Below are positions 30,987-54,770 of a stretch of 64,000 nt of DNA, piece after piece (positions within the stretch are counted from its first letter, which is position 1; each line of letters opens with the position of its first letter). Source of the DNA: Azolla caroliniana. Lineage: Eukaryota; Plantae; Polypodiophyta. Location: the NCBI GenBank assembly GCA_043228905.1, contig JBHGNT010000054.1:62001-126000 (forward strand), written 5' to 3'. The notes below the pieces were generated by a model that was given only the letters and a program-made list of their open reading frames with translations, did no database searches and was not told the DNA's origin. Both the position numbers and the translations under genes were made by a program.

Positions 30987-30992
30987 GCAAAT
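30987..30992. other. Junction of 92-bp deletion (type A truncated monomer); also at 34547-34552, 39530-39535, 48375-48380
   Basis: gaaggaaaaa-gcaaat-cgaaggtaac joins monomer offset 133 to offset 47 of the next unit. Anchor spacing 34414 to 34678 = 264 = 356-92. Confidence 0.92.
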
Positions 30993-32360
30993 CGAAGGTA
31001 ACGAATATAGCCATGATATGGAATTGAAAAATCAAGATTTAAAAACTCTGGTCGAGAGACATAAAGAACAAAAGCAATTTTGAGGAAGGCGTAGACAAGA
31101 GCGCCTAACTGACTGAAAATGTTCCTACATGGCTTGTGTGATATCGGATTTTGGTGTTTAAACATGCGAATCGAAGGTAACGAAACTAGCCATGATATCG
31201 AATTAAAAAATCAAGATTTTGCAACTCAGGTCGAGAGACATGAAGAAAAAAGCAATTTTGAGGAAGGCGTAGACAAGAGCGCCTCACTGACTGAAAATGT
31301 TCATAGATGGCTTGTGTGATATTGGATTTTGGTGTTTAAACATGCAATCGAAGGTAACGAATATAGCCACGACATGGAATTGAAAAATCAAGATTTTGAA
31401 ACTCAAGTCGAGAGACATGAAGAAAAAAGCAATTTTGAGGAAGGCGTAGACAAGACCGCCTCACTGACTGAAAATGTTCATAGATGGCTCGTGTGATATC
31501 GGATTTTGGTGTTTAAACATGAAAATCGAAGGTAACGAATATAGCCATGATATGGAATTGAAAAATCAAGATTTAAAAACTCTGGTCGAGAGACATAAAG
31601 AAAAAAGCAATTTTGAGGAAGGCGTAGACAAGAGCGCCTGACTGACTGAAAATGTTCCTACATGGCTTGTGTGATATCGGATTTTGGTGTTTAAACATGC
31701 GAATCGAAGGTAACGAATATAGCCATGATATGGAATTGAAAAATCAAGATTTAAAAACTCAGGTCGAGAGACATAAAGAAAAAAGCAATTTTAAGGAAGG
31801 TGTCGACAAGAGCGCCACAATGAATGAAAATGCTCATAGATTGCTCGTGTGATATCGGATTTTGGTGTTTAAACATGCGAATCGAAGGTAACGAATCTAG
31901 CCATGATATGGAATTAAAAAATAAAGAATTTGATACTCATATCGAGAGACATGAAGAAAAAAGCAATTTTGAGGTAGGCGTAGACAAGAGCGCCTCACTA
32001 ACTAAAAATGTTCATAGATGGCTCGTGTGATATTGGATTTTGGTGTTTAAACATGCAAATCGAAGGTAACGAAACTAGCCATGATATCGAATTAAAAAAT
32101 CAAGATTTTGCAACTCAGGTCGAGAGACATGAAGAAAAAAGCAATTTTGAGGAAGGCATAGACAAGAGCGCCTCACTGACTTAAAATGTTCCTAGATGGC
32201 TTGTGTGATATCGGATTTTGGTGTTTAAACATGCGAATCGAAGGTAACGAATATAGCCATGATATGGAATTGAAAAATCAAGATTTAAAAACTCTGGTCG
32301 AGAGACATGAAGTGAAAAGCAAATTTAAGGAAGGCGTAGACAAGAGCGCCTCAATGGATG

Positions 32361-35300
32361 AAAATGTTAATAGATTCCTCGTGTGATATCGGATTTTGGT
32401 GTTTAAACATGCGAATCGAAGGTAACGAAACTAGCCATGATATGGAATTAAAAAATCAAGATTTTGAAACTCAAGTCGAGAGACATGAAGGAAAAAGCCA
32501 TTTTGAGGAAGGCGTAGACAAGAGCGCCATGATATGGAATTGAAAAATCAATATTTTGAAACTCAAGTCGAGAGACATGAAGAGAAAAGCAAATTTGAGG
32601 AAGGCGTAGACAAGAGCGCCTCAATGAATGAAAATGTTCATAGAATCCTCGTGTGATATCGGATTTAGGTTTTTAAACATGCGAATCGAAGGTAACGAAA
32701 CTAGCCATGATATGGAATTAAAATATCAAGATTTTGAAACTCAGGTCGAGAGAAGTGAAGAAAAAAGCAATTTTGAGGAAGGCGTAGACAAGTGCGCCTC
32801 ACTGACTGAAAATGTTCATAGATGGCTCGTGTGATATCGGGTTTTGGTGTTTAAACATGCGAATTGAAGGTAACGAATATAGCCATGATATGGAATTGAA
32901 AAATCAAGATTTAAAAACTCAGGTCGAGAGACATAAAGTAAAAAGGAAATTTAAGGAAGGCGTCGACAAGAGCGCCTCAATGGATGAAAAGGTTCATAGA
33001 TTCCTCGTGTGATATCGGATTTTGGTGTTTAAACATGCGAATCGAAGGTAACGAATCTAGCCATGATATGGAATTAAAAAATAAAGAATTTGATACTCAT
33101 ATCGAGAGACATGAAGAAAAAAGCAATTTTGAGGTAGGCGTAGACAAGAGCGCCTCACTGACTAAAAATGTTCATAGATGGCTCGTGTGATATCGAATTT
33201 TGGTGTTTAAACATGCAAATCGAAGGTAACGAAACTAGCCATGATATCGAATTAAAAAATCAAGATTTTGCAACTCAGGTCGAGAGACATGAAGAAAAAA
33301 GCAATTTTGAGGAAGGCGTAGACAAGAGCGCCTCACTGACTGAAAATGTTCATAGATGGCTTGTGTGATATCGGATTTTGGTGTTTAAACATGCGAATCG
33401 AAGGTAACGAATAAAGCCATGATATGGAATTGAAAAATAAAGATTTAAAAACTCAGGTCGAGAGACATAAAGAAAAAAGCAATTTTGAGGAAGGCGTAGA
33501 CAAGAGCGCCTCACTGACTGAAAATGTTCATAGATGGCTTGTGTGATATCGGATTTTGGTGTTTAAACATGCGAATCGAAGGTAACGAAACTAGCCATGA
33601 TATGGAATTGAAAAATGAAGATTTAAAAACTCAGGTCCAGAGACATGAAGTAAAAAGCAAATTTAAGGAAGCCGTCGACAAGAGCGCCACAATGAATGAA
33701 AATGTTAATAGATTCCTCGTGTAATATCGGATTTTGGTGTTTAAACATGCGAATCGAAGGTAACGAAACTAGCCATGATATGGAATTAAAAAATCAAGAT
33801 TTTGAAACTCAAGTCGAGAGACATGAAGGAAAAAGCAAATTTGAGGAAGGCGTAGACAAGAGCGCCTCACTTACTAAAAATGTTCATAGATGGCTCGTGT
33901 GATATCGGATTTTGGTGTTTAAACATGCGAATCGAAGGTAACGAATCTAGCCATGATATGGAATTAAAAAATCAAGATTTTGAAACTCAAGTCAAGATAC
34001 ATGACGAAAACAACAATTTCGAGGAAGGCGTAGACAAGAGCGCCTCACTGACTGAAAATGTTCCTAGATGGCTTGTGTGATATCGGATTCTGGTGTTTAA
34101 ACATGCGAATCGAAGGTAACGAATATAGCCATGATATGGAATTGAAAAATCAAGATTTAAAAACTCAGGTCCAGAGACATGAAGTAAAAAGCAAATTTAA
34201 GGAAGCCGTCGACAAGAGCGCCACAATGAATGAAAATGTTAATAGATTCCTCGTGTGATATCGGATTTTGGTGTTTAAACATGCGAATCGAAGGTAACGA
34301 AACTAGCCATGATATGGAATTAAAAAATCAAGATTTTGAAACTCAAGTCGAGAGACATGAAGGAAAAAGCCATTTTGAGGAAGGCGTAGACAAGAGCGCC
34401 TGACTGACTTAAAATGTTCCTAGATGGCTTGTGTGATATCAGATTTTGGTGTTTAAACATGCGAATCGAAGGTAACGAATATAGCCATGATATGGAATTA
34501 AAAAATCAAGATTTTCAAACTCAAGTCGAGAGACATGAAGGAAAAAGCAAATCGAAGGTAACGAATATAGCCATGATATGGAATTGAAAAATCAAGATTT
34601 AAAAACTCTGGTCGAGAGACATAAAGAAAAAAGCAATTTTGAGGAAGGCGTAGACAAGAGCGCCTAACTGACTGAAAATGTTCCTACATGGCTTGTGTGA
34701 TATTGGATTTTGGTGTTTAAACATGCGAATCGAAGGTAACGAAACTAGCCATGATATCGAATTAAAAAATCAAGATTTTGCAACTCAGGTCGAGAGACAT
34801 GAAGAAAAAAGCAATTTTGAGGAAGGCGTAGACAAGAGCGCCTCACTGACTGAAAATGTTCATAGATGGCTTGTGTGATATCGGATTTTGGTGTTTAAAC
34901 ATGCAATCGAAGGTAACGAATATAGCCACGACATGGAATTGAAAAATCAAGATTTTGAAACTCAAGTCGAGAGACATGAAGAAAAAAGCAATTTTGAGGA
35001 AGGCGTAGACAAGACCGCCTCACTGACTGAAAATGTTCATAGATGGCTCGTGTGATATCGGATTTTGGTGTTTAAACATGAAAATCGAAGGTAACGAATA
35101 TAGCCATGATATGGAATTGAAAAATCAAGATTTAAAAACTCTGGTCGAGAGACATAAAGAAAAAAGCAATTTTGAGGAAGGCGTAGACAAGAGCGCCTAA
35201 CTGACTGAAAATGTTCCTACATGGCTTTCGTGATATCGGATTTTGGTGTTTAAACATGCGAATCGAAGGTAACGAATATAGCCATGATATGGAATTGAAA

Positions 35301-38300
35301 AATCAAGATTTAAAAACTCAGGTCGAGAGACATAAAGAAAAAAGCAATTTTAAGGAAGGTGTCGACAAGAGCGCCACAATGAATGAAAATGCTCATAGAT
35401 TGCTCGTGTGATATCGGATTTTGGTGTTTAAACATACGAATCGAAGGTAACGAATCTAGCCATGATATGGAATTAAAAAATCAAGATTTTCAAACTCAAG
35501 TCGAGAGACATGAAGGAAAAAGCAAATTTGAGGAAGGCGTAGACAAGAGCGCCTCACTTACTAAAAATGTTCATAGATGGCTCGTGTGATATCGGATTTT
35601 GGTGTTTAAACATGCGAATCGAAGGTAACGAATCTAGCCATGATATGGAATTAAAAAATAAAGAATTTGATACTCATATCGAGAGACATGAAGAAAAAAG
35701 CAATTTTGAGGTAGGCGTAGACAAGAGCGCCTCACTGACTAAAAATGTTCATAGATGGCTCGTGTGATATTGGATTTTGGTGTTTAAACATGCAAATCGA
35801 AGGTAACGAAACTAGCCATGATATGGAATTAAAAAATCAAGGTTTTGAAACTCAGGTCGAGAGACATGAAGAAAAAAGCAATTTTGAGGAAGGCATAGAC
35901 AAGAGCGCCTCACTGACTTAAAATGTTCCTAGATGGCTTGTGTGATATCGGATTTTGGTGTTTAAACATGCGAATCGAAGGTAACGAATATATCCATGAT
36001 ATGGAATTGAAAAATCAAGATTTAAAAACTCAGGTCCAGAGACATGAAGTAAAAAGCAAATTTAAGGAAGCCGTCGACAAGAGCGCCACAATGAATGAAA
36101 ATGTTAATAGATTCCTCGTGTGATATCGGATTTTGGTGTTTAAACATGCGAATCGAAGGTAACGAAACTAGCCATGATATCGAATTAAAAAATCAAGATT
36201 TTGAAACTCAAGTCGAGAGACATGAAGGAAAAAGCCATTTTGAGGAAGGCGTAGACAAGAGCGCCTCAATGAATGAAAATGTTCATAGATTCCTCGTGTG
36301 ATATCGGATTTTGGTGTTTAAACATGCGAATCGAAGGTAACGAATCTAGCCATGATATGGAATTAAAAAATAAAGATTTTGATACTCATATCGAGAGACA
36401 TGAAGAAAAAAGCAATTTTGAGGAAGGCGTAGACAAGAGCGCCTCACTGACTGAATATGTTCATAGATGGCTCGTGTGATATCGGATTTTTGTGTTGAAA
36501 CATGCGAATCGAAGGTAACGAATATAGCCATGATATGGAATTGAAAAATCAAGATTTAAAAACTCTGGTCGAGAGACATAAAGAAAAAAGCAATTTTGAG
36601 GGAGGCGTAGACAAGAGCGCCTCACTGACTGAAAATGTTCATAGATGGCTTGTGTGATATCGGATTTTGGTGTTTAAACCTGCGAATCGAAGGTAACGAA
36701 TATAGCCATGATATGGAATTGAAAAATCAAGATTTAAAAACTCAGGTCCAGAGACATGAAGTAAAAAGCAAATTTAAGGAAGCCGTCGACAAGAGCGCCA
36801 CAATGAATGAAAATGTTAATAGATTCCTCGTGTGATATCGGATTTTGGTGTTTAAACATGCGAATCGAAGGTAACGAAACTAGCCATGATATGGAATTAA
36901 AAAATCAAGATTTTGAAACTCAAGTCGAGAGACATGAAGAAAAAAGCCATTTTGAGGAAGGCGTAGACAAGAGCGCCTCACTGACTTAAAATGTTCCTAG
37001 ATGGCTTGTGTGATATCAGATTTTGGTGTTTAAACATGCGAATCGAAGGTAACGAATATAGCCATGATATGGAATTGAAAAATCAAGATTTAAAAACTCT
37101 GGTCAAGAGACATAAAGAAAAAAGAAATTTTGAGGAAGGCGTAGACAAGAGCGCCTCACTGACTGAAAATGTTCCTAGTTGGCTTGTGTGATATCGGATT
37201 TTGGTGTTTAAACCTGCGAATCGAAGGTAACGAAACTAGCGATGATATGGAATTGAAAAATCAAGATTTAAAAACTCAGGTCCAGAGACATGAAGTAAAA
37301 ATCAAATTTAAGGAAGCCGTCGACAAGAGCGCCACAATGAATGAAAATGTTAATAGATTCCTCGTGTGATATCGGATTTTGGTGTTTAAACATGCGAATC
37401 GAAGGTAACGAAACTAGCCATGATATGGAATTAAAAAATCAAGATTTTGAAACTCAAGTCGAGAGACATGAAGGAAAAAGCCATTTTGAGGAAGGCGTAG
37501 ACAAGAGCGCCATGATATGGAATTGAAAAATCAATATTTTGAAACTCAAGTCGAGAGACATGAAGAGAAAAGCAAATTTGAGGAAGGCGTAGACAAGAGC
37601 GCCTCAATGAATGAAAATGTTCATAGAATCCTCGTGTGATATCGGATTTAGGTTTTTAAACATGCGAATCGAAGGTAACGAAACTAGCCATGATATGGAA
37701 TTAAAATATCAAGATTTTGAAACTCAGGTCGAGAGAAGTGAAGAAAAAAGCAATTTTGAGGAAGGCGTAGACAAGTGCGCCTCACTGACTGAAAATGTTC
37801 ATAGATGGCTCGTGTGATATCGGGTTTTGGTGTTTAAACATGCGAATTGAAGGTTACGAATATAGCCATGATATGGAATTGAAAAATCAAGATTTAAAAA
37901 CTCAGGTCGAGAGACATAAAGTAAAAAGGAAATTTAAGGAAGGCGTCGACAAGAGCGCCTCAATGGATGAAAAGGTTCATAGATTCCTCGTGTGATATCG
38001 GATTTTGGTGTTTAAACATGCGAATCGAAGGTAACGAATCTAGCCATGATATGGAATTAAAAAATAAAGAATTTGATACTCATATCGAGAGACATGAAGA
38101 AAAAAGCAATTTTGAGGTAGGCGTAGACAAGAGCGCCTCACTGACTAAAAATGTTCATAGATGGCTCGTGTGATATCGAATTTTGGTGTTTAAACATGCA
38201 AATCGAAGGTAACGAAACTAGCCATGATATCGAATTAAAAAATCAAGATTTTGCAACTCAGGTCGAGAGACATGAAGAAAAAAGCAATTTTGAGGAAGGC

Positions 38301-41300
38301 GTAGACAAGAGCGCCTCACTGACTGAAAATGTTCATAGATGGCTTGTGTGATATCGGATTTTGGTGTTTAAACATGCGAATCGAAGGTAACGAATAAAGC
38401 CATGATATGGAATTGAAAAATAAAGATTTAAAAACTCAGGTCGAGAGACATAAAGAAAAAAGCAATTTTGAGGAAGGCGTAGACAAGAGCGCCTCACTGA
38501 CTGAAAATGTTCATAGATGGCTTGTGTGATATCGGATTTTGGTGTTTAAACATGCGAATCGAAGGTAACGAAACTAGCCATGATATGGAATTGAAAAATG
38601 AAGATTTAAAAACTCAGGTCCAGAGACATGAAGTAAAAAGCAAATTTAAGGACGCCGTCGACAAGAGCGCCACAATGAATGAAAATGTTAATAGATTCCT
38701 CGTGTGATATCGGATTTTGGTGTTTAAACATGCGAATCAAAGGTAACGAAACTAGCCATGATATGGAATTAAAAAATCAAGATTTTGAAACTCAAGTCGA
38801 GAGACATGAAGGAAAAAGCAAATTTGAGGAAGGCGTAGACAAGAGCGCCTCACTTACTAAAAATGTTCATAGATGGCTCGTGTGATATCGGATTTTGGTG
38901 TTTAAACATGCGAATCGAAGGTAACGAATCTAGCCATGATATGGAATTAAAAAATCAAGATTTTGAAACTTAAGTCAAGATACATGACGAAAACAACAAT
39001 TTCGAGGAAGGCGTAGACAAGAGCGCCTCACTGACTGAAAATGTTCCTAGATGGCTTGTGTGATATCGGATTCTGGTGTTTAAACATGCGAATCGAAGGT
39101 AACGAATATAGCCATGATATGGAATTGAAAAATCAAGATTTAAAAACTCAGGTCCAGAGACATGAAGTAAAAAGCAAATTTAAGGAAGCCGTCGACAAGA
39201 GCGCCACAATGAATGAAAATGTTAATAGATTCCTCGTGTGATATCGGATTTTGGTGTTTAAACATGCGAATCGAAGGTAACGAAACTAGCCATGATATGG
39301 AATTAAAAAATCAAGATTTTGAAACTCAAGTCGAGAGACATGAAGGAAAAAGCCATTTTGAGGAAGGCGTAGACAAGAGCGCCTCACTGACTTAAAATGT
39401 TCCTAGATGGCTTGTGTGATATCAGATTTTGGTGTTTAAACATGCGAATCGAAGGTAACGAATATAGCCATGATATGGAATTAAAAAATCAAGATTTTCA
39501 AACTCAAGTCGAGAGACATGAAGGAAAAAGCAAATCGAAGGTAACGAATATAGCCATGATATGGAATTGAAAAATCAAGATTTAAAAACTCTGGTCGAGA
39601 GACATAAAGAACAAAAGCAATTTTGAGGAAGGCGTAGACAAGAGCGCCTAACTGACTGAAAATGTTCCTACATGGCTTGTGTGATATCGGATTTTGGTGT
39701 TTAAACATGCGAATCGAAGGTAACGAAACTAGCCATGATATCGAATTAAAAAATCAAGATTTTGCAACTCAGGTCGAGAGACATGAAGAAAAAAGCAATT
39801 TTGAGGAAGGCGTAGACAAGAGCGCCTCACTGACTGAAAATGTTCATAGATGGCTTGTGTGATATCGGATTTTGGTGTTTAAACATGCAATCGAAGGTAA
39901 CGAATATAGCCACGACATGGAATTGAAAAATCAAGATTTTGAAACTCAAGTCGAGAGACATGAAGAAAAAAGCAATTTTGAGGAAGGCGTAGACAAGACC
40001 GCCTCACTGACTGAAAATGTTCATAGATGGCTCGTGTGATATCGGATTTTGGTGTTTAAACATGAAAATCGAAGGTAACGAATATAGCCATGATATGGAA
40101 TTGAAAAATCAAGATTTAAAAACTCTGGTCGAGAGACATAAAGAAAAAAGCAATTTTGAGGAAGGCGTAGACAAGAGCGCCTAACTGACTGAAAATGTTC
40201 CTACATGGCTTGTGTGATATCGGATTTTGGTGTTTAAACATGCGAATCGAAGGTAACGAATATAGCCATGATATGGAATTGAAAAATCAAGATTTAAAAA
40301 CTCAGGTCGAGAGACATAAAGAAAAAAGCAATTTTAAGGAAGGTGTCGACAAGAGCGCCACAATGAATGAAAATGCTCATAGATTGCTCGTGTGATATCG
40401 GATTTTGGTGTTTAAACATGCGAATCGAAGGTAACGAATCTAGCCATGATATGGAATTAAAAAATCAAGATTTTCAAACTCAAGTCGAGAGACATGAAGG
40501 AAAAAGCAAATTTGAGGAAGGCGTAGACAAGAGCGCCTCACTTACTAAAAATGTTCATAGATGGCTCGTGTGATATCGGATTTTGGTGTTTAAACATGCG
40601 AATCGAAGGTAACGAATCTAGCCATGATATGGAATTAAAAAATAAAGAATTTGATACTCATATCGAGAGACATGAAGAAAAAAGCAATTTTGAGGTAGGC
40701 GTAGACAAGAGCGCCTCACTGACTAAAAATGTTCATAGATGGCTCGTGTGATATTGGATTTTGGTGTTTAAACATGCAAATCGAAGGTAACGAAACTAGC
40801 CATGATATCGAATTAAAAAATCAAGATTTTGCAACTCAGGTCGAGAGACATGAAGAAAAAAGCAATTTTGAGGAAGGCATAGACAAGAGCGCCTCACTGA
40901 CTTAAAATGTTCCTAGATGGCTTGTGTGATATCGGATTTTGGTGTTTAAACATGCGAATCGAAGGTAACGAATATAGCCATGATATGGAATTGAAAAATC
41001 AAGATTTAAAAACTCTGGTCGAGAGACATGAAGTGAAAAGCAAATTTAAGGAAGGCGTAGACAAGAGCGCCTCAATGGATGAAAATGTTAATAGATTCCT
41101 CGTGTGATATCGGATTTTGGTGTTTAAACATGCGAATCGAAGGTAACGAAACTAGCCATGATATCGAATTAAAAAATCAAGATTTTGAAACTCAAGTCGA
41201 GAGACATGAAGGAAAAAGCCATTTTGAGGAAGGCGTAGACAAGAGCGCCTCAATGAATGAAAATGTTCATAGATTCCTCGTGTGATATCGGATTTTGGTG

Positions 41301-44300
41301 TTTAAACATGCGAATCGAAGGTAACGAATCTAGCCATGATATGGAATTAAAAAATAAAGATTTTGATACTCATATCGAGAGACATGAAGAAAAAAGCAAT
41401 TTTGAGGAAGGCGTAGACAAGAGCGCCTCACTGACTGAATATGTTCATAGATGGCTCGTGTGATATCGGATTTTGGTGTTGAAACATGCGAATCGAAGGT
41501 AACGAATATAGCCATGATATGGAATTGAAAAATCAAGATTTAAAAACTCTGGTCGAGAGACATAAAGAAAAAAGCAATTTTGAGGGAGGCGTAGACAAGA
41601 GCGCCTCACTGACTGAAAATGTTCATAGATGGCTTGTGTGATATCGGATTTTGGTGTTTAAACCTGCGAATCGAAGGTAACGAATATAGCCATGATATGG
41701 AATTGAAAAATCAAGATTTAAAAACTCAGGTCCAGAGACATGAAGTAAAAAGCAAATTTAAGGAAGCCGTCGACAAGAGCGGCACAATGAATGAAAATGT
41801 TAATAGATTCCTCGTGTGATATCGGATTTTGGTGTTTAAACATGCGAATCGAAGGTAACGAAACTAGCCATGATATGGAATTAAAAAATCAAGATTTTGA
41901 AACTCAAGTCGAGAGACATGAAAAAAAAGCCATTTTGAGGAAGGCGTAGACAAGAGCGCCTCACTGACTTAAAATGTTCCTAGATGGCTTGTGTGATATC
42001 AGATTTTGGTGTTTAAACATGCGAATCGAAGGTAACGAATATAGCCATGATATGGAATTGAAAAATCAAGATTTAAAAACTCTGGTCAAGAGACATAAAG
42101 AAAAAAGCAATTTTGAGGAAGGCGTAGACAAGAGCGCCTCACTGACTGAAAATGTTCCTAGTTGGCTTGTGTGATATCGGATTTTGGTGTTTAAACCTGC
42201 GAATCGAAGGTAACGAAACTAGCGATGATATGGAATTGAAAAATCAAGATTTAAAAACTCAGGTCCAGAGACATGAAGTAAAAATCAAATTTAAGGAAGC
42301 CGTCGACAAGAGCGCCACAATGAATGAAAATGTTAATAGATTCCTCGTGTGATATCGGATTTTGGTGTTTAAACATGCGAATCGAAGGTAACGAAACTAG
42401 CCATGATATGGAATTAAAAAATCAAGATTTTGAAACTCAAGGCGAGAGACATGAAGGAAAAAGCCATTTTGAGGAAGGCGTAGACAAGAGCGCCATGATA
42501 TGGAATTGAAAAATCAATATTTTGAAACTCAAGTCGAGAGACATGAAGAGAAAAGCAAATTTGAGGAAGGCGTAGACAAGAGCGCCTCAATGAATGAAAA
42601 TGTTCATAGAATCCTCGTGTGATATCGGATTTAGGTTTTTAAACATGCGAATCGAAGGTAACGAAACTAGCCATGATATGGAATTTAAATATCAAGATTT
42701 TGAAACTCAGGTCGAGAGAAGTGAAGAAAAAAGCAATTTTGAGGAAGGCGTAGACAAGTGCGCCTCACTGACTGAAAATGTTCATAGATGGCTCGTGTGA
42801 TATCGGGTTTTGGTGTTTAAACATGCGAATTGAAGGTAACGAATATAGCCATGATATGGAATTGAAAAATCAAGATTTAAAAACTCAGGTCGAGAGACAT
42901 AAAGTAAAAAGGAAATTTAAGGAAGGCGTCGACAAGAGCCCCTCAATGGATGAAAAGGTTCATAGATTCCTCGTGTGATATCGGATTTTGGTGTTTAAAC
43001 ATGCGAATCGAAGGTAACGAATCTAGCCATGATATGGAATTAAAAAATAAAGAATTTGATGCTCATATCGAGAGACATGAAGAGAAAAGCAATTTTGAGG
43101 TAGGCGTAGACAAGAGCGCCTCACTGACTAAAAATGTTCATAGATGGCTCGTGTGATATCGAATTTTGGTGTTTAAACATGCAAATCGAAGGTAACGAAA
43201 CTAGCCATGATATCGAATTAAAAAATCAAGATTTTGCAACTCAGGTCGAGAGACATGAAGAAAAAAGCAATTTTGAGGAAGGCGTAGACAAGAGCGCCTC
43301 ACTGACTGAAAATGTTCATAGATGGCTTGTGTGATATCGGATTTTGGTGTTTAAACATGCGAATCGAAGGTAACGAATAAAGCCATGATATGGAATTGAA
43401 AAATAAAGATTTAAAAACTCAGGTCGAGAGACATAAAGAAAAAAGCAATTTTGAGGAAGGCGTAGACAAGAGCGCCTCACTGACTGAAAATGTTCATAGA
43501 TGGCTTGTGTGATATCGGATTTTGGTGTTTAAACATGCGAATCGAAGGTAACGAAACTAGCCATGATATGGAATTGAAAAATGAAGATTTAAAAACTCAG
43601 GTCCAGAGACATAAAGTAAAAAGCAAATTTAAGAAAGCCGTCGACAAGAGCGCCACAATGAATGAAAATGTTAATAGATTCCTCGTGTGATATCGGATTT
43701 TGGTGTTTAAACATGCGAATCGAAGGTAACGAAACTAGCCATGATATGGAATTAAAAAATCAAGATTTTGAAACTCAAGTCGAGAGACATGAAGGAAAAA
43801 GCAAATTTGAGGAAGGCGTAGACAAGAGCGCCTCACTTACTAAAAATGTTCATAGATGGCTCGTGTGATATCGGATTTTGGTGTTTAAACATGCGAATCG
43901 AAGGTAACGAATCTAGCCATGATATGGAATTAAAAAATCAAGATTTTGAAACTCAAGTCAAGATACATGACGAAAACAACAATTTCGAGGAAGGCGTAGA
44001 CAAGAGCGCCTCACTGACTGAAAATGTTCCTAGATGGCTTGTGTGATATCGGATTCTGGTGTTTAAACATGCGAATCGAAGGTAACGAATATAGCCATGA
44101 TATGGAATTGAAAAATCAAGATTTAAAAACTCAGGTCCAGAGACATGAAGTAAAAAGCAAATTTAAGGAAGCCGTCGACAAGAGCGCCACAATGAATGAA
44201 AATGTTAATAGATTCCTCGTGTGATATCGGATTTTGGTGTTTAAACATGCGAATCGAAGGTAACGAAACTAGCCATGATATGGAATTAAAAAATCAAGAT

Positions 44301-44373
44301 TTTGAAACTCAAGTCGAGAGACATGAAGGAAAAAGCCATTTTGAGGAAGGCGTAGACAAGAGCGCCTCACTGA
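32361..44373. repeat. 4983-bp higher-order repeat (27 full plus 2 truncated monomers), about 2.4 tandem copies
   Basis: Markers recur at +4983 (32358/37341/42324, 32628/37611/42594, 34058/39041/44024). 29x178-86-92-1 = 4983. Confidence 0.92.
32526..32528. other. Junction of 86-bp deletion (type B truncated monomer); also at 37509-37511, 42492-42494, 46354-46356, 52834-52836
   Basis: gacaagagc-gcc-atgatatgg joins offset 162 to offset 70 of the next unit through a GCC microhomology. Spacing 32358 to 32628 = 270 = 356-86. Confidence 0.92.
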
Positions 44374-44734
44374 ATGAAAATGTTCATAGATGGCTCGTGT
44401 GATATCGGATTTTGGTGTTTAAACATGCGAATCGAAGGTAACGAATCTAGCCATGATATGGAATTAAAAAATCAAGATTTTCAAACTCAAGTCGAGAGAC
44501 ATGAAGGAAAAAGCAAATTTGAGGAAGCCGTCGACAAGAGCGCCACAATGAATAAAAATGTTAATAGATTCCTCGTGTGATATCGGATTTTGGTGTTTAA
44601 ACATGCGAATCGAAGGTAACTAATCTAGCCATGATATGGAATTAAAAAATCAAGATTTTGAAACTCAAGTCAAGATACATGACGAAAACAACAATTTTGA
44701 GAATGGCGTAGACAAAAGCGCCTCACTGACTGAA

Positions 44735-44798
44735 TATGTTCATAGATTCCTCGTGTGATATCGGATTATGTTCATAGATGGCTCGTGTGATATCGGAT
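44735..44798. other. Unique 32-bp monomer remnant (imperfect 32-bp direct repeat)
   Basis: tatgttcatagattcctcgtgtgatatcggat is followed directly by tatgttcatagatggctcgtgtgatatcggat; ATG anchors at 44736 and 44768. Confidence 0.9.
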
Positions 44799-46013
44799 TT
44801 TGGTGTTTAAACATGCGAATCGAAGGTAACGAATCTAGCCATGATATGGAATTAAAAAATCAAGATTTTGAAACTCAAGTCGAGAGACATGAAGGAAAAA
44901 GCAATTTTGAGGAAGGCGTAGACAAGAGCGCCTCACTTACTAAAAATGTTCATAGATGGCTCGTGTGATATCGGATTTTGGTGTTTAAACATGCGAATCG
45001 AAGGTAACGAATCTAGCCATGATATGGAATTAAAAAATCAAGATTTTGAAACTCAAGTCGAGAGACATGAAGGAAAAAGCAATTTTGAGGAAGGCGTAGA
45101 CAAGAGCGCCTCACTTACTAAAAATGTTCATAGATGGCTCGTGTGATATCGGATTTTGGTGTTTAAACATGCGAATCGAAGGTAACGAATCTAGCCATGA
45201 TATGGAATTAAAAAATCAAGATTTTGAAACTCAAGTCAACATACATGACGAAAACAGCAATTTCGAGGAAGGCGTAGACAAGAGCGCCTCACTGACTGAA
45301 AATGTTCCTAGATGGCTTGTGTGATATCGGATTTTGGTGTTTAAACATGCGAATCGAAGGTAACGAATATAGCCATGATATGGAATTGAAAAATCAAGAT
45401 TTAAAAACTCAGGTCCAGAGATATGAAGTAAAAAGCAAATTTAAGGAAGCCGTCGACAAGAGCGCCACAATGAATGAAAATGTTAATAGATTCCTCGTGT
45501 GATATCGGATTTTGGTGTTTAAACATGCGAATCGAAGGTAACGAAACTAGCCATGATATGGAATTAAAAAATCAAGATTTTGAAACTCAAGTCGAGAGAC
45601 ATGAAGGAAAAAGCAAATTTGAGGAAGGCGTAGACAAGAGCGCCTCACTTACTAAAAATGTTCCTAGATGGCTTGTGTGATATTGGATTTTCGTGTTTAA
45701 ACATGCGAATCGAAGGTAACGAATCTAGCCATGATATGGAATTAAAAAATAAAGAATTTGATACTCATATCGAGAGACATGAAGAAAAAAGCAATTTTGA
45801 GGTAGGCGTAGACAAGAGCGCCTCACTGACTAAAAATGTTCATAGATGGCTCGTGTGATATCGGATTTTGGTGTTTAAACATGCGAATCGAAGGTAACGA
45901 ATCTAGCCATGAGATGGAATTAAAAAATCAAGATTTTGAAACTCAAGTCAAGATACATGACGAAAACAGCAATTTTGAGGAAGGCGTAGACAAAAGCGCC
46001 TCACTGACTGAAA

Positions 46014-49000
46014 ATGTTCCTAGTTGGCTTGTGTGATATCGGATTTTGGTGTTTAAACCTGCGAATCGAAGGTAACGAAACTAGCGATGATATGGAATTG
46101 AAAAATCAAGATTTAAAAACTCAGGTCCAGAGACATGAAGTAAAAATCAAATTTAAGGAAGCCGTCGACAAGAGCGCCACAATGAATGAAAATGTTAATA
46201 GATTCCTCGTGTGATATCGGATTTTGGTGTTTAAACATGCGAATCGAAGGTAACGAAACTAGCCATGATATGGAATTAAAAAATCAAGATTTTGAAACTC
46301 AAGTCGAGAGACATGAAGGAAAAAGCCATTTTGAGGAAGGCGTAGACAAGAGCGCCATGATATGGAATTGAAAAATCAATATTTTGAAACTCAAGTCGAG
46401 AGACATGAAGAGAAAAGCAAATTTGAGGAAGGCGTAGACAAGAGCGCCTCAATGAATGAAAATGTTCATAGAATCCTCGTGTGATATCGGATTTAGGTTT
46501 TTAAACATGCGAATCGAAGGTAACGAAACTAGCCATGATATGGAATTAAAATATCAAGATTTTGAAACTCAGGTCGAGAGAAGTGAAGAAAAAAGCAATT
46601 TTGAGGAAGGCGTAGACAAGTGCGCCTCACTGACTGAAAATGTTCATAGATGGCTCGTGTGATATCGGGTTTTGGTGTTTAAACATGCGAATTGAAGGTA
46701 ACGAATATAGCCATGATATGGAATTGAAAAATCAAGATTTAAAAACTCAGGTCGAGAGACATAAAGTAAAAAGGAAATTTAAGGAAGGCGTCGACAAGAG
46801 CGCCTCAATGGATGAAAAGGTTCATAGATTCCTCGTGTGATATCGGATTTTGGTGTTTAAACATGCGAATCGAAGGTAACGAATCTAGCCATGATATGGA
46901 ATTAAAAAATAAAGAATTTGATACTCATATCGAGAGACATGAAGAAAAAAGCAATTTTGAGGTAGGCGTAGACAAGAGCGCCTCACTGACTAAAAATGTT
47001 CATAGATGGCTCGTGTGATATCGAATTTTGGTGTTTAAACATGCAAATCGAAGGTAACGAAACTAGCCATGATATCGAATTAAAAAATCAAGATTTTGCA
47101 ACTCAGGTCGAGAGACATGAAGAAAAAAGCAATTTTGAGGAAGGCGTAGACAAGAGCGCCTCACTGACTGAAAATGTTCATAGATGGCTTGTGTGATATC
47201 GGATTTTGGTGTTTAAACATGCGAATCGAAGGTAACGAAACTAGCCATGATATGGAATTGAAAAATAAAGATTTAAAAACTCTGGTCGAGAGACATAAAG
47301 AAAAAAGCAATTTTGAGGAAGGCGTAGACAAGAGCGCCTCACTGACTGAAAATGTTCATAGATGGCTTGTGTGATATCGGATTTTGGTGTTTAAACATGC
47401 GAATCGAAGGTAACGAAACTAGCCATGATATGGAATTGAAAAATGAAGATTTAAAAACTCAGGTCCAGAGACATGAAGTAAAAAGCAAATTTAAGGAAGC
47501 CGTCGACAAGAGCGCCACAATGAATGAAAATGTTAATAGATTCCTCGTGTGATATCGGATTTTGGTGTTTAAACATGCGAATCGAAGGTAACGAAACTAG
47601 CCATGATATGGAATTAAAAAATCAAGATTTTGAAACTCAAGTCGAGAGACATGAAGGAAAAAGCAAATTTGAGGAAGGCGTAGACAAGAGCGCCTCACTT
47701 ACTAAAAATGTTCATAGATGGCTCGTGTGATATCGGATTTTGGTGTTTAAACATGCGAATCGAAGGTAACGAATCTAGCCATGATATGGAATTAAAAAAT
47801 CAAGATTTTGAAACTCAAGTCAAGATACATGACGAAAACAACAATTTCGAGGAAGGCGTAGACAAGAGCGCCTCACTGACTGAAAATGTTCCTAGATGGC
47901 TTGTGTGATATCGGATTCTGGTGTTTAAACATGCGAATCGAAGGTAACGAATATAGCCATGATATGGAATTGAAAAATCAAGATTTAAAAACTCAGGTCC
48001 AGAGACATGAAGTAAAAAGCAAATTTAAGGAAGCCGTCGACAAGAGCGCCACAATGAATGAAAATGTTAATAGATTCCTCGTGTGATATCGGATTTTGGT
48101 GTTTAAACATGCGAATCGAAGGTAACGAAACTAGCCATGATATGGAATTAAAAAATCAAGATTTTGAAACTCAAGTCGAGAGACATGAAGGAAAAAGCCA
48201 TTTTGAGGAAGGCGTAGACAAGAGCGCCTCACTGACTTAAAATGTTCCTAGATGGCTTGTGTGATATCAGATTTTGGTGTTTAAACATGCGAATCGAAGG
48301 TAACGAATATAGCCATGATATGGAATTAAAAAATCAAGATTTTCAAACTCAAGTCGAGAGACATGAAGGAAAAAGCAAATCGAAGGTAACGAATATAGCC
48401 ATGATATGGAATTGAAAAATCAAGATTTAAAAACTCTGGTCGAGAGACATAAAGAACAAAAGCAATTTTGAGGAAGGCGTAGACAAGAGCGCCTAACTGA
48501 CTGAAAATGTTCCTACATGGCTTGTGTGATATCGGATTTTGGTGTTTAAACATGCGAATCGAAGGTAACGAAACTAGCCATGATATCGAATTAAAAAATC
48601 AAGATTTTGCAACTCAGGTCGAGAGACATGAAGAAAAAAGCAATTTTGAGGAAGGCGTAGACAAGAGCGCCTCACTGACTGAAAATGTTCATAGATGGCT
48701 TGTGTGATATCGGATTTTGGTGTTTAAACATGCAATCGAAGGTAACGAATATAGCCACGACATGGAATTGAAAAATCAAGATTTTGAAACTCAAGTCGAG
48801 AGACATGAAGAAAAAAGCAATTTTGAGGAAGGCGTAGACAAGACCGCCTCACTGACTGAAAATGTTCATAGATGGCTCGTGTGATATCGGATTTTGGTGT
48901 TTAAACATGAAAATCGAAGGTAACGAATATAGCCATGATATGGAATTGAAAAATCAAGATTTAAAAACTCTGGTCGAGAGACATAAAGAAAAAAGCAATT

Positions 49001-52000
49001 TTGAGGAAGGCGTAGACAAGAGCGCCTAACTGACTGAAAATGTTCCTACATGGCTTGTGTGATATCGGATTTTGGTGTTTAAACATGCGAATCGAAGGTA
49101 ACGAATATAGCCATGATATGGAATTGAAAAATCAAGATTTAAAAACTCAGGTCGAGAGACATAAAGAAAAAAGCAATTTTAAGGAAGGTGTCGACAAGAG
49201 CGCCACAATGAATGAAAATGCTCATAGATTGCTCGTGTGATATCGGATTTTGGTGTTTAAACATGCGAATCGAAGGTAACGAATCTAGCCATGATATGGA
49301 ATTAAAAAATCAAGATTTTCAAACTCAAGTCGAGAGACATGAAGGAAAAAGCAAATTTGAGGAAGGCGTAGACAAGAGCGCCTCACTTACTAAAAATGTT
49401 CATAGATGGCTCGTGTGATATCGGATTTTGGTGTTTAAACATGCGAATCGAAGGTAACGAATCTAGCCATGATATGGAATTAAAAAATAAAGAATTTGAT
49501 ACTCATATCGAGAGACATGAAGAAAAAAGCAATTTTGAGGTAGGCGTAGACAAGAGCGCCTCACTGACTAAAAATGTTCATAGATGGCTCGTGTGATATT
49601 GGATTTTGGTGTTTAAACATGCAAATCGAAGGTAACGAAACTAGCCATGATATCGAATTAAAAAATCAAGATTTTGCAACTCAGGTCGAGAGACATGAAG
49701 AAAAAAGCAATTTTGAGGAAGGCATAGACAAGAGCGCCTCACTGACTTAAAATGTTCCTAGATGGCTTGTGTGATATCGGATTTTGGTGTTTAAACATGC
49801 GAATCGAAGGTAACGAATATAGCCATGATATGGAATTGAAAAATCAAGATTTAAAAACTCTGGTCGAGAGACATGAAGTGAAAAGCAAATTTAAGGAAGG
49901 CGTAGACAAGAGCGCCTCAATGGATGAAAATGTTAATAGATTCCTCGTGTGATATCGGATTTTGGTGTTTAAACATGCGAATCGAAGGTAACGAAACTAG
50001 CCATGATATCGAATTAAAAAATCAAGATTTTGAAACTCAAGTCGAGAGACATGAAGGAAAAAGCCATTTTGAGGAAGGCGTAGACAAGAGCGCCTCAATG
50101 AATGAAAATGTTCATAGATTCCTCGTGTGATATCGGATTTTGGTGTTTAAACATGCGAATCGAAGGTAACGAATATAGCCATGATATGGAATTAAAAAAT
50201 CAAGATTTAAAAACTCAGGTCCAGAGACATGAAGTAAAAAGCAAATTTAAGGAAGGCGTAGACAAGAGCGCCTCAATGGATAAAAATGTTCATAGATTCC
50301 TCGTGTGATATCGGATTTTGGTGTTTAAACATGCGAATCGAAGGTAACGAATATAGCCATGATATGGAATTAAAAAATAAAGATTTTGAAACTCAGGTCG
50401 AGAGACATGAAGAAAAAAGCAATTTTGAGGAAGGCGTAGACAAGAGCGCCTCACTGACTGAAAATGTTCCTAGATGCCTTGTGTGATATCGGATTTTGGT
50501 GTTTAAACCTGCGAATCGAAGGTAACGAATATAGCCATGATATGGAATTGAAAAATCAAGATTTAAAAACTCAGGTCCAGAGACATGAAGTAAAAAGCAA
50601 ATTTAAGGAAGCCGTCGACAAGAGCGCCACAATGAATGAAAATGTTAATAGATTCCTCGTGTGATATCGGATTTTGGTGTTTAAACATGCGAATCGAAGG
50701 TAACGAAACTAGCCATGATATGGAATTAAAAAATCAAGATTTTGAAACTCAAGTCGAGAGACATGAAGAAAAAAGCCATTTTGAGGAAGGCGTAGACAAG
50801 AGCGCCTCACTGACTTAAAATGTTCCTAGATGGCTTGTGTGATATCAGATGGCTTGTGTGATATCAGACAAGAGCGCCTCACTGACTGAAAATGTTCCTA
50901 GATGCCTTGTGTGATATCGGATTTTGGTGTTTAAACCTGCGAATCGAAGGTAACGAATATAGCCATGATATGGAATTGAAAAATCAAGATTTAAAAACTC
51001 AGGTCCAGAGACATGAAGTAAAAAGCAAATTTAAGGAAGCCGTCGACAAGAGCGCCACAATGAATGAAAATGTTCATAGATGGCTCGTGTGATATTGGAT
51101 TTTGGTGTTTAAACATGCAAATCGAAGGTAACGAAACTAGCCATGATATCGAATTAAAAAATCAAGATTTTGCAACTCAGGTCGAGAGACATGAAGAAAA
51201 AAGCAATTTTGAGGAAGGCATAGACAAGAGCGCCTCACTGACTTAAAATGTTCCTAGATGGCTTGTGTGATATCGGATTTTGGTGTTTAAACATGCGAAT
51301 CGAAGGTAACGAATATAGCCATGATATGGAATTGAAAAATCAAGATTTAAAAACTCTGGTCGAGAGACATGAAGTGAAAAGCAAATTTAAGGAAGGCGTA
51401 GACAAGAGCGCCTCAATGGATGAAAATGTTAATAGATTCCTCGTGTGATATCGGATTTTGGTGTTTAAACATGCGAATCGAAGGTAACGAAACTAGCCAT
51501 GATATCGAATTAAAAAATCAAGATTTTGAAACTCAAGTCGAGAGACATGAAGGAAAAAGCCATTTTGAGGAAGGCGTAGACAAGAGCGCCTCAATGAATG
51601 AAAATGTTCATAGATTCCTCGTGTGATATCGGATTTTGGTGTTTAAACATGCGAATCGAAGGTAACGAATCTAGCCATGATATGGAATTAAAAAATAAAG
51701 ATTTTGATACTCATATCGAGAGACATGAAGAAAAAAGCAATTTTGAGGAAGGCGTAGACAAGAGCGCCTCACTGACTGAATATGTTCATAGATGGCTCGT
51801 GTGATATCGGATTTTGGTGTTGAAACATGCGAATCGAAGGTAACGAATATAGCCATGATATGGAATTGAAAAATCAAGATTTAAAAACTCTGGTCGAGAG
51901 ACATAAAGAAAAAAGCAATTTTGAGGGAGGCGTAGACAAGAGCGCCTCACTGACTGAAAATGTTCATAGATGGCTTGTGTGATATCGGATTTTGGTGTTT

Positions 52001-53740
52001 AAACCTGCGAATCGAAGGTAACGAATATAGCCATGATATGGAATTGAAAAATCAAGATTTAAAAACTCAGGTCCAGAGACATGAAGTAAAAAGCAAATTT
52101 AAGGAAGCCGTCGACAAGAGCGCCACAATGAATGAAAATGTTAATAGATTCCTCGTGTGATATCGGATTTTGGTGTTTAAACATGCGAATCGAAGGTAAC
52201 GAAACTAGCCATGATATGGAATTAAAAAATCAAGATTTTGAAACTCAAGTCGAGAGACATGAAGAAAAAAGCCATTTTGAGGAAGGCGTAGACAAGAGCG
52301 CCTCACTGACTTAAAATGTTCCTAGATGGCTTGTGTGATATCAGATTTTGGTGTTTAAACATGCGAATCGAAGGTAACGAATATAGCCATGATATGGAAT
52401 TGAAAAATCAAGATTTAAAAACTCTGGTCAAGAGACATAAAGAAAAAAGCAATTTTGAGGAAGGCGTAGACAAGAGCGCCTCACTGACTGAAAATGTTCC
52501 TAGTTGGCTTGTGTGATATCGGATTTTGGTGTTTAAACCTGCGAATCGAAGGTAACGAAACTAGCGATGATATGGAATTGAAAAATCAAGATTTAAAAAC
52601 TCAGGTCCAGAGACATGAAGTAAAAATCAAATTTAAGGAAGCCGTCGACAAGAGCGCCACAATGAATGAAAATGTTAATAGATTCCTCGTGTGATATCGG
52701 ATTTTGGTGTTTAAACATGCGAATCGAAGGTAACGAAACTAGCCATGATATGGAATTAAAAAATCAAGATTTTGAAACTCAAGTCGAGAGACATGAAGGA
52801 AAAAGCCATTTTGAGGAAGGCGTAGACAAGAGCGCCATGATATGGAATTGAAAAATCAATATTTTGAAACTCAAGTCGAGAGACATGAAGAGAAAAGCAA
52901 ATTTGAGGAAGGCGTAGACAAGAGCGCCTCAATGAATGAAAATGTTCATAGAATCCTCGTGTGATATCGGATTTAGGTTTTTAAACATGCGAATCGAAGG
53001 TAACGAAACTAGCCATGATATGGAATTTAAATATCAAGATTTTGAAACTCAGGTCGAGAGAAGTGAAGAAAAAAGCAATTTTGAGGAAGGCGTAGACAAG
53101 TGCGCCTCACTGACTGAAAATGTTCATAGATGGCTCGTGTGATATCGGGTTTTGGTGTTTAAACATGCGAATTGAAGGTAACGAATATAGCCATGATATG
53201 GAATTGAAAAATCAAGATTTAAAAACTCAGGTCGAGAGACATAAAGTAAAAAGGAAATTTAAGGAAGGCGTCGACAAGAGCGCCTCAATGGATGAAAAGG
53301 TTCATAGATTCCTCGTGTGATATCGGATTTTGGTGTTTAAACATGCGAATCGAAGGTAACGAATCTAGCCATGATATGGAATTAAAAAATAAAGAATTTG
53401 ATACTCATATCGAGAGACATGAAGAAAAAAGCAATTTTGAGGTAGGCGTAGACAAGAGCGCCTCACTGACTAAAAATGTTCATAGATGGCTCGTGTGATA
53501 TCGAATTTTGGTGTTTAAACATGCAAATCGAAGGTAACGAAACTAGCCATGATATCGAATTAAAAAATCAAGATTTTGCAACTCAGGTCGAGAGACATGA
53601 AGAAAAAAGCAATTTTGAGGAAGGCGTAGACAAGAGCGCCTCACTGACTGAAAACGTTCATAGATGGCTTGTGTGATATCGGATTTTGGTGTTTAAACAT
53701 GCGAATCGAAGGTAACGAATAAAGCCATGATATGGAATTG
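46014..53740. repeat. Further copy of the 4983-bp HOR lengthened by 1496 bp
   Basis: 46014-50150 matches 37169-41310 (+8845) and 51070-53700 matches 40729-43360 (+10341/10342). The period 46186 to 52666 is 6480 = 4984+1496, and 1496 = 8x178+72. Confidence 0.85.
50820..50891. other. Unique 72-bp rearranged unit containing a 19-bp tandem duplication
   Basis: agatggcttgtgtgatatc occurs twice (50828-50846, 50847-50865), then aga-caagagcgcc; ATG anchors at 50820 and 50892. Confidence 0.9.
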
Positions 53741-54770
53741 AAAAATCAAGATTTAAAAACTCAGGTCGAGAGACATAAAGTAAAAAGGAAATTTAAGGAA
53801 GGCGTCGACAAGAGCGCCTCAATGCATGAAAAGGTTCATAGATTCCTCGTGTGATATCGGATTTTGGTGTTTAAACATGCGAATCGAAGGTAACGAATCT
53901 ACCCATGATATGGAATTAAAAAATAAAGAATTTGATACTCATATCGAGAGACATGAAGAAAAAAGCAATTTTGAGGTAGGCGTAGACAAGAGCGCCTCAC
54001 TGACTAAAAATGTTCATAGAATCCTCGTGTGATATCGGATTTAGGTTTTTAAACATGCGAATCGAAGGTAACGAAACTAGCCATGATATGGAATTAAAAT
54101 ATCAAGATTGTGAAACTCAGGTCGAGAGGATTGAAGAAAAAAGCAATTTTGAGGAAGGCGTAGACAAGTGCGCCTCACTGACTGAAAATGTTCATAGATG
54201 GCTCGTGTGATATCGGGTTTTGGTGTTTAAACATGCGAACTGAAGGTAACGAATATAGCCATGATATGGAATTGAAAAATCAAGATTTAAAAACTCAGGT
54301 CGAGAGACATAAAGTAAAAAGGAAATTTAAGGAAGGCGTCGACAAGAGCGCCTCAATGGATGAAAAGGTTCATAGATTCCTCGTGTGATATCGGATTTTG
54401 GTGTTTAAACATGCGAATCGAAGGTAACGAATCTAGCCATGATATGGAATTAAAAAATAAAGAATTTGATACTCATATCGAGAGACATGAAGAAAAAAGC
54501 AATTTTGAGGTAGGCGTAGACAAGAGCGCCTCACTGACTAAAAATGTTCATAGATGGCTCGTGTGATATCGAATTTTGGTGTTTAAACATGCAAATCGAA
54601 GGTAACGAAACTAGCCATGATATCGAATTAAAAAATCAAGATTTTGCAACTCAGGTCGAGAGACATGATGAAAAAAGCAATTTTGAGGAAGGCGTAGACA
54701 AGAGCGCCTCACTGACTGAAAATGTTCATAGATGGCTTGTGTGATATCGGATTTTGGTGTTTAAACATGC
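52942..54770. repeat. Local 6-monomer duplication (1068 bp) with internal 3-monomer periodicity
   Basis: The rare gaatcctcg/atttaggtttt monomer occurs at 52942 and 54010. 53120/54188, 53292/54360 and 53476/54544 are all +1068, and 53292/53826/54360 are spaced by 534. Confidence 0.75.

What the first reader, a model, noticed from the sequence alone, without database searches (positions are those of the whole stretch)
30987..52836. Paired 92-bp and 86-bp deletions sum to exactly one monomer and toggle the array out of and back into register
Seen: two recurrent truncated monomers, type A (-92 bp at about 30990, 34550, 39533, 48378) and type B (-86 bp at about 32528, 37511, 42494, 46356, 52836). 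92+86 = 178. The order is A,B,A,B,A,B,[32-bp remnant],B,A,[72-bp unit],B, so the only break in alternation spans a rearrangement scar. Junction A moves from offset 133 to 47 (-86) and junction B from offset 162 to 248 (+86), the same displacement in and out. The HOR therefore stays at 28x178-1 bp while containing a block about half a monomer out of phase. Inference: either one length-conserving replacement from a template misaligned by 86 bp, later amplified with the HOR, or two deletions retained together because long-range nucleosome/CENH3 register matters. The alternation itself follows from HOR amplification, so this is one or two original events, not nine; the exact complementarity is the unusual part.
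Basis: partly seen in the sequence, partly recalled or inferred. Interest (0 to 1): 0.8.

Follow-up and report, generated by a model that had tools for sequence, protein, structure and literature searches.

The report
Two complementary phase-shift joints in satellite
Inside a plant 178-bp satellite array, two old mis-joins that remove 92 and 86 bases were copied along with a 28-unit repeat block; the sizes do add up to one unit, but nothing here shows this is more than an ordinary repair scar pair amplified by unequal exchange.

Summary
A wrap-around alignment to the 178-bp consensus finds joint A (phase 13 to 106, skipping 92 bp) at 30990, 34550, 39533 and 48378. Joint B (phase 39 to 126, skipping 86 bp) lies at 32526, 37509, 42492, 46354 and 52834. 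The repeat period is 4983 bp.

- **Origin:** A has 1 nt and B 3 nt of microhomology, so both are illegitimate joints. Both predate amplification of the 28-monomer unit, whose copies are 99.3-99.7% identical.
- **What the sum means:** "A+B=178" is the same as saying the flanks are in phase and the period is a whole number of monomers.
- **No sign that register matters:** A +32 scar and a +72 scar are uncompensated. One B-to-B unit has no A. The right flank ends about 18 bp out of phase with the left. Single-base indels also drift the register.
- **Cryptic 89-bp dimer** (also noted by this scan on this window): not supported by shuffling tests.
- **Circle reintegration signature:** not met.
- **Chance:** 1/177 for one pair, about 5.5% for any pair among the five joint classes here, and many satellite windows were screened.

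I could not separate one compound repair event from two independent joints. Genome-wide counts of A-only and B-only units were out of reach.

The parts
1..30880 (+). Left host array: 178-bp monomers in one register (drift 0 to +3 by 1-bp indels), with nested 19-mer and 50-mer HORs and no large joints
30976..31061 (+). Joint A, copy 1: an 86-bp unit (14 bp of phase 0-13 plus 72 bp of phase 106-177). Its left flank matches the other A copies for only about 108 bp, then becomes left-host sequence
30990..32525 (+). Out-of-phase L block, short version (72 bp + 8 monomers + 40 bp), register about 89
32486..32577 (+). Joint B, copy 1: a 92-bp unit (40 bp of phase 0-39 plus 52 bp of phase 126-177), 3-nt GCC overlap
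32526..34549 (+). R block (52 bp + 11 monomers + 14 bp = 2024 bp), back in host register. Its first six monomers are of right-host types
34550..37508 (+). Joint A copy 2 followed by a full L block (72 bp + 16 monomers + 40 bp = 2959 bp)
37509..39532 (+). Joint B copy 2 followed by an R block
39533..42491 (+). Joint A copy 3 followed by an L block. Its first 784 bp equal window 8829-9611 (783/783 matches plus a 1-base A-run indel)
42492..46353 (+). Joint B copy 3 followed by an aberrant 3862-bp unit without A. It follows the R block for about 1880 bp, then about 1.6 kb of other monomers holding the +32 joint at 44768 (phase 87 to 56)
46354..48377 (+). Joint B copy 4 followed by an R block
48378..52833 (+). 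Joint A copy 4 followed by an enlarged L block with a compound scar at 50847 and 50866 (phase 82 to 64, then 82 to 30; +19 and +53 = +72)
52834..53780 (+). Joint B copy 5 followed by the last 5 monomers that still follow the R block. This is the right edge of the amplified region
53781..64000 (+). Right host array, in one register (19-21), i.e. about 18 bp off the left host
8829..9611 (+). Unbroken paralogue (possible template) of the sequence just right of joint A. The homology begins exactly at the joint

Best explanation
The window is a single 178-bp satellite array. At some point a block of left-host-type monomers became bounded by two illegitimate joints, A and B. A has 1 nt and B 3 nt of microhomology, so both look like end-joining or template-switch products. 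The block therefore lies 86/92 bp out of phase with both flanks.

Later, the stretch 'A - out-of-phase block - B - about 11 in-phase monomers' was amplified into four to five copies by ordinary in-phase unequal exchange or break-induced copying. The seam of that amplification is an invisible in-phase joint in the monomer just left of A. This makes the 4983-bp, 28-monomer HOR and the A/B alternation.

- **Shown:** the joints, their sizes, their identity across copies, and the amplification.
- **Inferred:** the order of events.

The exact sum of 178 is equivalent to 'the flanks are in phase' and to 'the period is a whole number of monomers'. I see no function or constraint behind it. I rate it most likely a coincidence between two independent joints, found because many satellite windows were screened. 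The joints themselves have no role beyond being scars.
For: - Joint classes and sizes.
- Identical joint sequences in all copies, with 1-nt and 3-nt overlaps.
- Unit copies are 99.3-99.7% identical, against a mean of 91% between monomers.
- The first A shares only about 108 bp of left flank with the other copies, and the last B only about 820-940 bp of right flank. This bounds the amplified region and puts the seam in an in-phase monomer.
- Block monomer types are shared with the left host, and R-block types with the right host.
- Register is not conserved overall. It runs 3, 89, 3, 88, 2, 88, 1, 33, 125, 33, 105, 19, and 1-bp indels also drift it.
- Three further, uncompensated illegitimate joints lie in the same 22 kb.
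- Chance is 1/177 per pair and 5.5% for any pair among five classes.
- This genome has 130 satellite notes in the scan.
Against: - Both shifts lie within 3 bp of half a monomer (89). For uniform independent shifts that is itself unlikely, about 4% for the first shift. Together with the exact sum, the pair is a rare draw.
- The two joints lie only 1.5-3 kb apart, while 41 kb of flanking array has none. This hints at one compound event.
- I could not count A-only and B-only units elsewhere in the genome, so the coincidence reading rests on argument, not on a measured background.
Confidence: 0.45

Rival explanations
1. One compound repair event made both joints. A broken end switched by microhomology to an out-of-phase template (the 8829-type sequence), copied 1.5-3 kb with further in-phase switches, and was rejoined to the array by a second microhomology joint. 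The complementary phase is then either luck within one event or the product of an unknown length-preserving constraint.
For: - A's right flank equals 8829-9611 (783/783 bases), and the homology starts exactly at the joint.
- The block is a mosaic of exact matches to scattered host sites.
- The two joints are close together, while the flanks have none.
- The compound scar at 50847/50866 shows that multi-switch repair does occur here.
- MMBIR, FoSTeS and template-switching SDSA are discussed for satellite joints in PMC7403614.
Against: - No known pathway forces the return joint into the complementary phase.
- Homology-driven second-end capture would anneal in phase. That leaves A alone, with no B.
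- 100% identity over 783 bp is also compatible with ordinary HOR paralogy (other HOR copies are 99.76-99.97% identical).
Confidence: 0.3
2. Breaks or joins in this satellite prefer a half-monomer offset. The cause would be either a cryptic dimer of about 89-bp halves or the DNA one nucleosome turn apart lying side by side. Each joint then removes about 89 bp, and two of them sum to about 178.
For: - Both shifts are 89 +/- 3.
- Both joints jump from the 13-39 segment to the 106-126 segment.
- An unchecked note of this scan reports a 259-bp (+81) chimeric monomer amplified elsewhere (s1-501325).
Against: - The consensus has no half-offset similarity. Offsets 86 and 92 give 47 matches each, against a mean of 48.5.
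- The best half-versus-half local score is 18, and 49 of 200 shuffles reach it. The local score banded to offsets 80-98 is 19, and 92 of 300 shuffles reach it.
- The other three joints in the window shift by +32, +19 and +53, not by about 89.
Confidence: 0.12
3. The pair is retained by selection because a long-range 178-bp chromatin register (CENH3 or canonical nucleosomes) must be kept across the array.
For: Three consecutive A-B pairs bring the register back to within 1 bp.
Against: - The +32 and +72 scars are uncompensated.
- One unit lacks A.
- The net offset between the two flanks is about 18 bp.
- 1-bp indels drift the register.
- The three restoring pairs are copies of one founder, so they are not independent.
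- The centromeric role of the satellite is unproven, and the satellite also lies at chromosome ends (notes).
Confidence: 0.05
4. Reintegration of an extrachromosomal circle of whole monomers at an out-of-phase site.
For: An integer-length insert automatically gives two joints whose shifts cancel. The signature is described for Drosophila Rsp-like arrays in PMC7403614.
Against: The signature requires the first and last truncated repeats of the insert to form one monomer. Here they sum to 112 bp (72+40) for the L block and 66 bp (52+14) for the R block. Exactly 178 bp, split between insert and host, would have to be lost as well, and no homology supports that loss.
Confidence: 0.05
5. Assembly artefact in a near-identical repeat.
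For: Satellite arrays are error-prone to assemble. The public runs were available only as short unitigs and could not bridge the joints.
Against: Each joint recurs 4-5 times, embedded in copies that carry their own private variants. An assembler does not invent that.
Confidence: 0.03

Closest known systems
Higher-order repeats of satellite DNA amplified by in-register unequal exchange or break-induced replication (human alpha satellite, Arabidopsis CEN178, maize CentC/knob; PMC6447721, PMC13011684, PMC11034957)
   Same: A multi-monomer unit (28 monomers, 4983 bp) is repeated with 99.3-99.7% identity while monomers differ by about 9%. Structural variants of the unit (shortened, enlarged) arise by in-phase exchange.
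   Different: The unit carries two non-homologous, out-of-phase joints. The 'out-of-register' hybrid monomers described for alpha satellite keep full monomer length because the exchange is still homologous.
Microhomology-mediated satellite joints and truncated monomers (Drosophila Rsp-like/1.688, Sproul et al. 2020, PMC7403614)
   Same: Truncated monomers at joints with a few bases of microhomology. The joint, once formed, is propagated with the array.
   Different: Here both sides of each joint are the same satellite family. The two joints cancel each other's phase shift.
eccDNA reintegration signature (first plus last truncated repeat = one monomer; PMC7403614)
   Same: Two joints whose phase shifts sum to zero modulo the monomer.
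   Different: The block termini do not make a whole monomer (112 or 66 bp). It is the two junction units (86 + 92) that do.

Membership tests
Satellite higher-order repeat (HOR) | Unit of several monomers repeated in tandem, with copies much more alike than the monomers within a unit | tested here: met
   Units are 99.26-99.46% identical over 4983 bp. Mean monomer-to-monomer identity is 0.913.
Satellite higher-order repeat (HOR) | Period is a whole number of monomers | tested here: met
   4983 = 28x178 - 1. The missing base belongs to a 177-bp monomer type that is also present outside the HOR.
End-joining / microhomology-mediated illegitimate joint | No homology across the joint beyond 0-a few bases; sequence on each side continues a different phase | tested here: met
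   A has a 1-nt overlap and B a 3-nt (GCC) overlap. The flanks are out of phase by 92 and 86 bp.
eccDNA reintegration | First and last truncated repeats of the inserted block together form one complete monomer | tested here: not met
   L block 72+40 = 112 bp; R block 52+14 = 66 bp. The criterion is from PMC7403614.
Recombination between half-monomer sub-repeats (cryptic dimer) | Significant sequence similarity of the monomer to itself at an offset of about 86-92 bp | tested here: not met
   47 matches at offsets 86 and 92, against a mean of 48.5 and sd of 5.3. The local scores are reached by 49/200 and 92/300 dinucleotide shuffles.
Centromeric (CENH3-bound) satellite with phased nucleosomes | CENH3 occupancy and sequence-phased dyads | not testable with these tools
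   No ChIP or MNase data were reachable. Earlier notes place the same satellite at chromosome ends as well.
Register kept by selection | Phase-breaking events are compensated, and flanks stay in phase | tested here: not met
   The +32 and +72 scars are uncompensated, one unit lacks A, and the flanks are about 18 bp apart in phase.

The most novel reading that the evidence does not exclude
The out-of-phase block and its two exactly complementary joints record a repair or chromatin process that conserves length modulo the monomer. One version is exchange between fibres held in absolute nucleosome register. Another is selection for array-wide phasing. In either case, satellite arrays would 'count' monomer lengths independently of sequence phase.
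Probability: 0.1. Interest if true: 0.7.

Novelty: new member of a known kind. Interest (0 to 1): 0.3.

Why it matters
If complementary joint pairs turned out to be over-represented genome-wide, that would point to a length-preserving step in satellite repair or to selection on chromatin phasing. Either would be a new constraint on satellite and centromere evolution.

As it stands, the locus is a cleanly resolved example of how illegitimate joints are captured and multiplied by HOR amplification. It also shows that phase-breaking scars are tolerated in this array. Its practical value is as a set of markers (A, B, +32, +72) for tracing the history of this array.

Tried and rejected
1. **Cryptic 89-bp dimer.** Ungapped offset spectrum, rotating half-versus-half local alignment and alignment banded to offsets 80-98 all fall within shuffles.
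2. **eccDNA reintegration.** The termini rule fails.
3. **Reciprocal products of one unequal exchange.** The reciprocal of A would be a 105-to-14 joint. None exists in the window.
4. **A as the amplification seam (B-only founder).** This would need the duplication length to be a whole number of monomers for no reason. The leftmost A also has an R-block-like left flank of only about 108 bp. Not excluded, but it explains nothing more.
5. **Reconstruction of the unbroken ancestors.** Only A's right side (8829-9611) has a clear one. A's left side has paralogues in left-host rows 72-73 and 122-123. B's left side matches a 048/049-type pair for about 220 bp only. B's right side has no unbroken paralogue in the window. 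A monomer type (050) with both the 40-bp and 72-bp ends exists, but that is expected by chance.
6. **Phylogeny of R-block copies, to order A and B in time.** It is star-like and uninformative.
7. **Public reads.** Nine runs of 4 studies hold the satellite, but only as 45-125-bp unitigs. No joint could be bridged or counted.
8. **Metagenome scan with the most conserved 24-mer.** No hit.
9. **Rfam scan of the whole window.** No family.
10. **Inverted repeats at the joints.** Only the small dyad present in every monomer turns up, away from the breakpoints.
Full report
**What the window is.** TRF reports one 178-bp tandem array over all 64,000 bases. Composition is flat, with GC 0.37, GC skew +0.25 and AT skew +0.2 throughout. 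No Rfam family matches. Earlier notes of this scan describe the genome as a plant, probably a fern. They place the same satellite both in 'centromere-like' arrays and at chromosome ends. I did not verify those notes.

**Checking the observation.** I aligned the window to its own 178-bp consensus with a cyclic dynamic programme that allows small indels and free jumps. It finds five jump classes.
- A: phase 13 to 106, skipping 92 bp, at 30990, 34550, 39533 and 48378.
- B: phase 39 to 126, skipping 86 bp, at 32526, 37509, 42492, 46354 and 52834.
- Three single-copy joints: 44768 (87 to 56, +32), 50847 (82 to 64, +19) and 50866 (82 to 30, +53).

There is no large jump in 1-30989 or in 52835-64000. 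The short units are 14+72 = 86 bp at A and 40+52 = 92 bp at B. The joint sequences are identical in all copies. A-A and B-B spacing is 4983 bp, and unit copies are 99.26-99.46% identical. The observation, including the order of the joints, is therefore confirmed.

**Nature of the joints.** At A the two parental phases share 1 nt. At B they share GCC. Neither is a homologous hybrid monomer of the kind called 'out of register' in alpha-satellite work, which keeps full monomer length (PMC6447721). The compound scar at 50847/50866 is a 19-bp stutter followed by a second jump. Both jumps land on AGA just after GATATC. The 44768 joint also leaves at phase 87. This shows that multi-switch illegitimate repair occurs in this array.

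**What the sum means.** With A = 13 to 106 and B = 39 to 126, the block between A and B starts at phase 106 and ends at phase 39, so its length is 112 bp plus whole monomers. The host resumes 112 bp further on in phase. Hence 'A+B = 178' is the same statement as 'the two flanks of the block are in phase'. After amplification it is also the same as 'the HOR period is a whole number of monomers'. The register track shows this directly: 3, 89, 3, 88, 2, 88, 1.

**History that can be read.**
- The first A shares only about 108 bp of left flank with the other A copies. Before that, the sequence continues the left host's own 50-mer HOR order.
- The last B shares about 820-940 bp with the other copies and then becomes right-host sequence.
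- The amplified region is therefore about 30.9-53.8 kb. Its seam is an in-phase, invisible exchange in the monomer just left of A. Both A and B predate the amplification.
- The out-of-phase (L) block is built from left-host monomer types. Its first 784 bp equal 8829-9611 with 783/783 matches plus one A-run indel, and the homology starts exactly at the joint.
- The rest of the block is a mosaic of 120-420-bp exact matches to scattered host sites.
- The in-phase (R) block begins with right-host types.
- The first L block is 8 monomers shorter than the standard. The fourth is 8 monomers plus 72 bp longer.

**The break in alternation.** The B-to-B unit 42492-46354 (3862 bp) follows the R block for about 1880 bp. 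It leaves the standard sequence 142 bp before the place where A would be. It then runs through about 1.6 kb of other monomers holding the +32 joint, and rejoins the standard only 360 bp before B. It is therefore not a standard unit from which A was simply cut out. It is an unpaired B with a net shift of -54.

**Does register matter?** The evidence says no at this scale.
- The three restoring A-B pairs are copies of one founder, so they are not independent.
- The +32 and +72 scars are not compensated.
- The register continues 33, 125, 33, 105 and ends at 19-21 in the right host, against 0-3 in the left host.
- Single-base indels shift the register several times.

**Tests of mechanisms that would make the sum non-accidental.**
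1. *Cryptic dimer* (also proposed in note s1-501263 on this window). Offsets 86 and 92 give 47 matches, against a mean of 48.5. The best half-versus-half local score of 18 is reached by 49/200 shuffles. The offset-banded score of 19 is reached by 92/300. Not supported.
2. *Reintegration of a whole-monomer circle.* The published signature is that the first and last truncated repeats of the insert form one monomer (PMC7403614). Here they sum to 112 or 66 bp. Not met.
3. *Reciprocal products of one exchange.* The reciprocal of A would be a 105-to-14 joint. It is absent.
4. *One compound template-switch event.* This is compatible with the verbatim copy at A's right flank and with the closeness of the two joints. 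But homology-guided second-end capture would anneal in phase and leave no B, and microhomology capture has no phase preference. I know of no pathway that enforces complementarity; this last point rests on general knowledge of SDSA, BIR and MMBIR.

**Chance.**
- For two independent uniform shifts the probability of an exact complementary sum is 1/177.
- For any pair among the five classes here it is about 5.5%.
- The scan has 130 satellite notes on this genome, so one such pair somewhere is not surprising.
- Against pure chance, both shifts lie within 3 bp of half a monomer, and the joints lie 1.5-3 kb apart while 41 kb of flanks have none.
- An unchecked note of a 259-bp (+81) chimeric monomer elsewhere (s1-501325) hints at a half-monomer bias. 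The other three joints here do not show it.

**Outside data.** Nine public runs from four studies hold the satellite, including a second organism label. All are kept as short unitigs of 45-125 bp, so no joint could be bridged or counted. A metagenome scan with the most conserved 24-mer found nothing. Genome-wide counts of A-only, B-only and paired units are the decisive test, and they could not be made.

**Verdict.** The arithmetic is right and the anatomy is now precise. What is there is a pair of old illegitimate joints bounding an out-of-phase block, multiplied by ordinary HOR amplification. I put about 45% on two independent joints whose sum is coincidental. I put about 30% on one compound repair event, about 12% on a half-monomer bias and about 5% on selection for register. 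The remainder goes to circle reintegration or an assembly artefact.

Noticed in passing
window 44768, 50847, 50866: The three single-copy joints all leave the monomer at phase 82-87, right after the GATATC palindrome. The two at 50847/50866 are 19 bp apart and both land on AGA. This is a stutter typical of template switching, and it suggests a fragile or pause site in the monomer.
   Followed up: partly
window 1-6764 and 11036-28838: Nested HORs in the left host: a 19-monomer unit (3382 bp, 99.97% between copies) and a 50-monomer unit (8901 bp, 99.76%).
   Followed up: partly
window 58400-62100: Short 4-monomer and 13-monomer repeat patterns of monomer types near the right end of the window.
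   Followed up: no
window 37509-42491: Weak 3-monomer periodicity inside the 28-monomer unit. Mean identity is higher at monomer offsets 3, 6 and 9, and one monomer type recurs every third position.
   Followed up: partly
window 8829-9611 versus 39533-40316 and 48378-49161: 783/783 identical bases between a left-host stretch and the start of the out-of-phase block 30-40 kb away. This is higher than between some neighbouring HOR copies, so long-range copying or conversion within the array is recent.
   Followed up: partly
whole window: Strong constant strand asymmetry (GC skew about +0.25, AT skew about +0.2). Every monomer also carries a small imperfect dyad, GAATTAAAAAATC / GATTTTGAAACTC.
   Followed up: no
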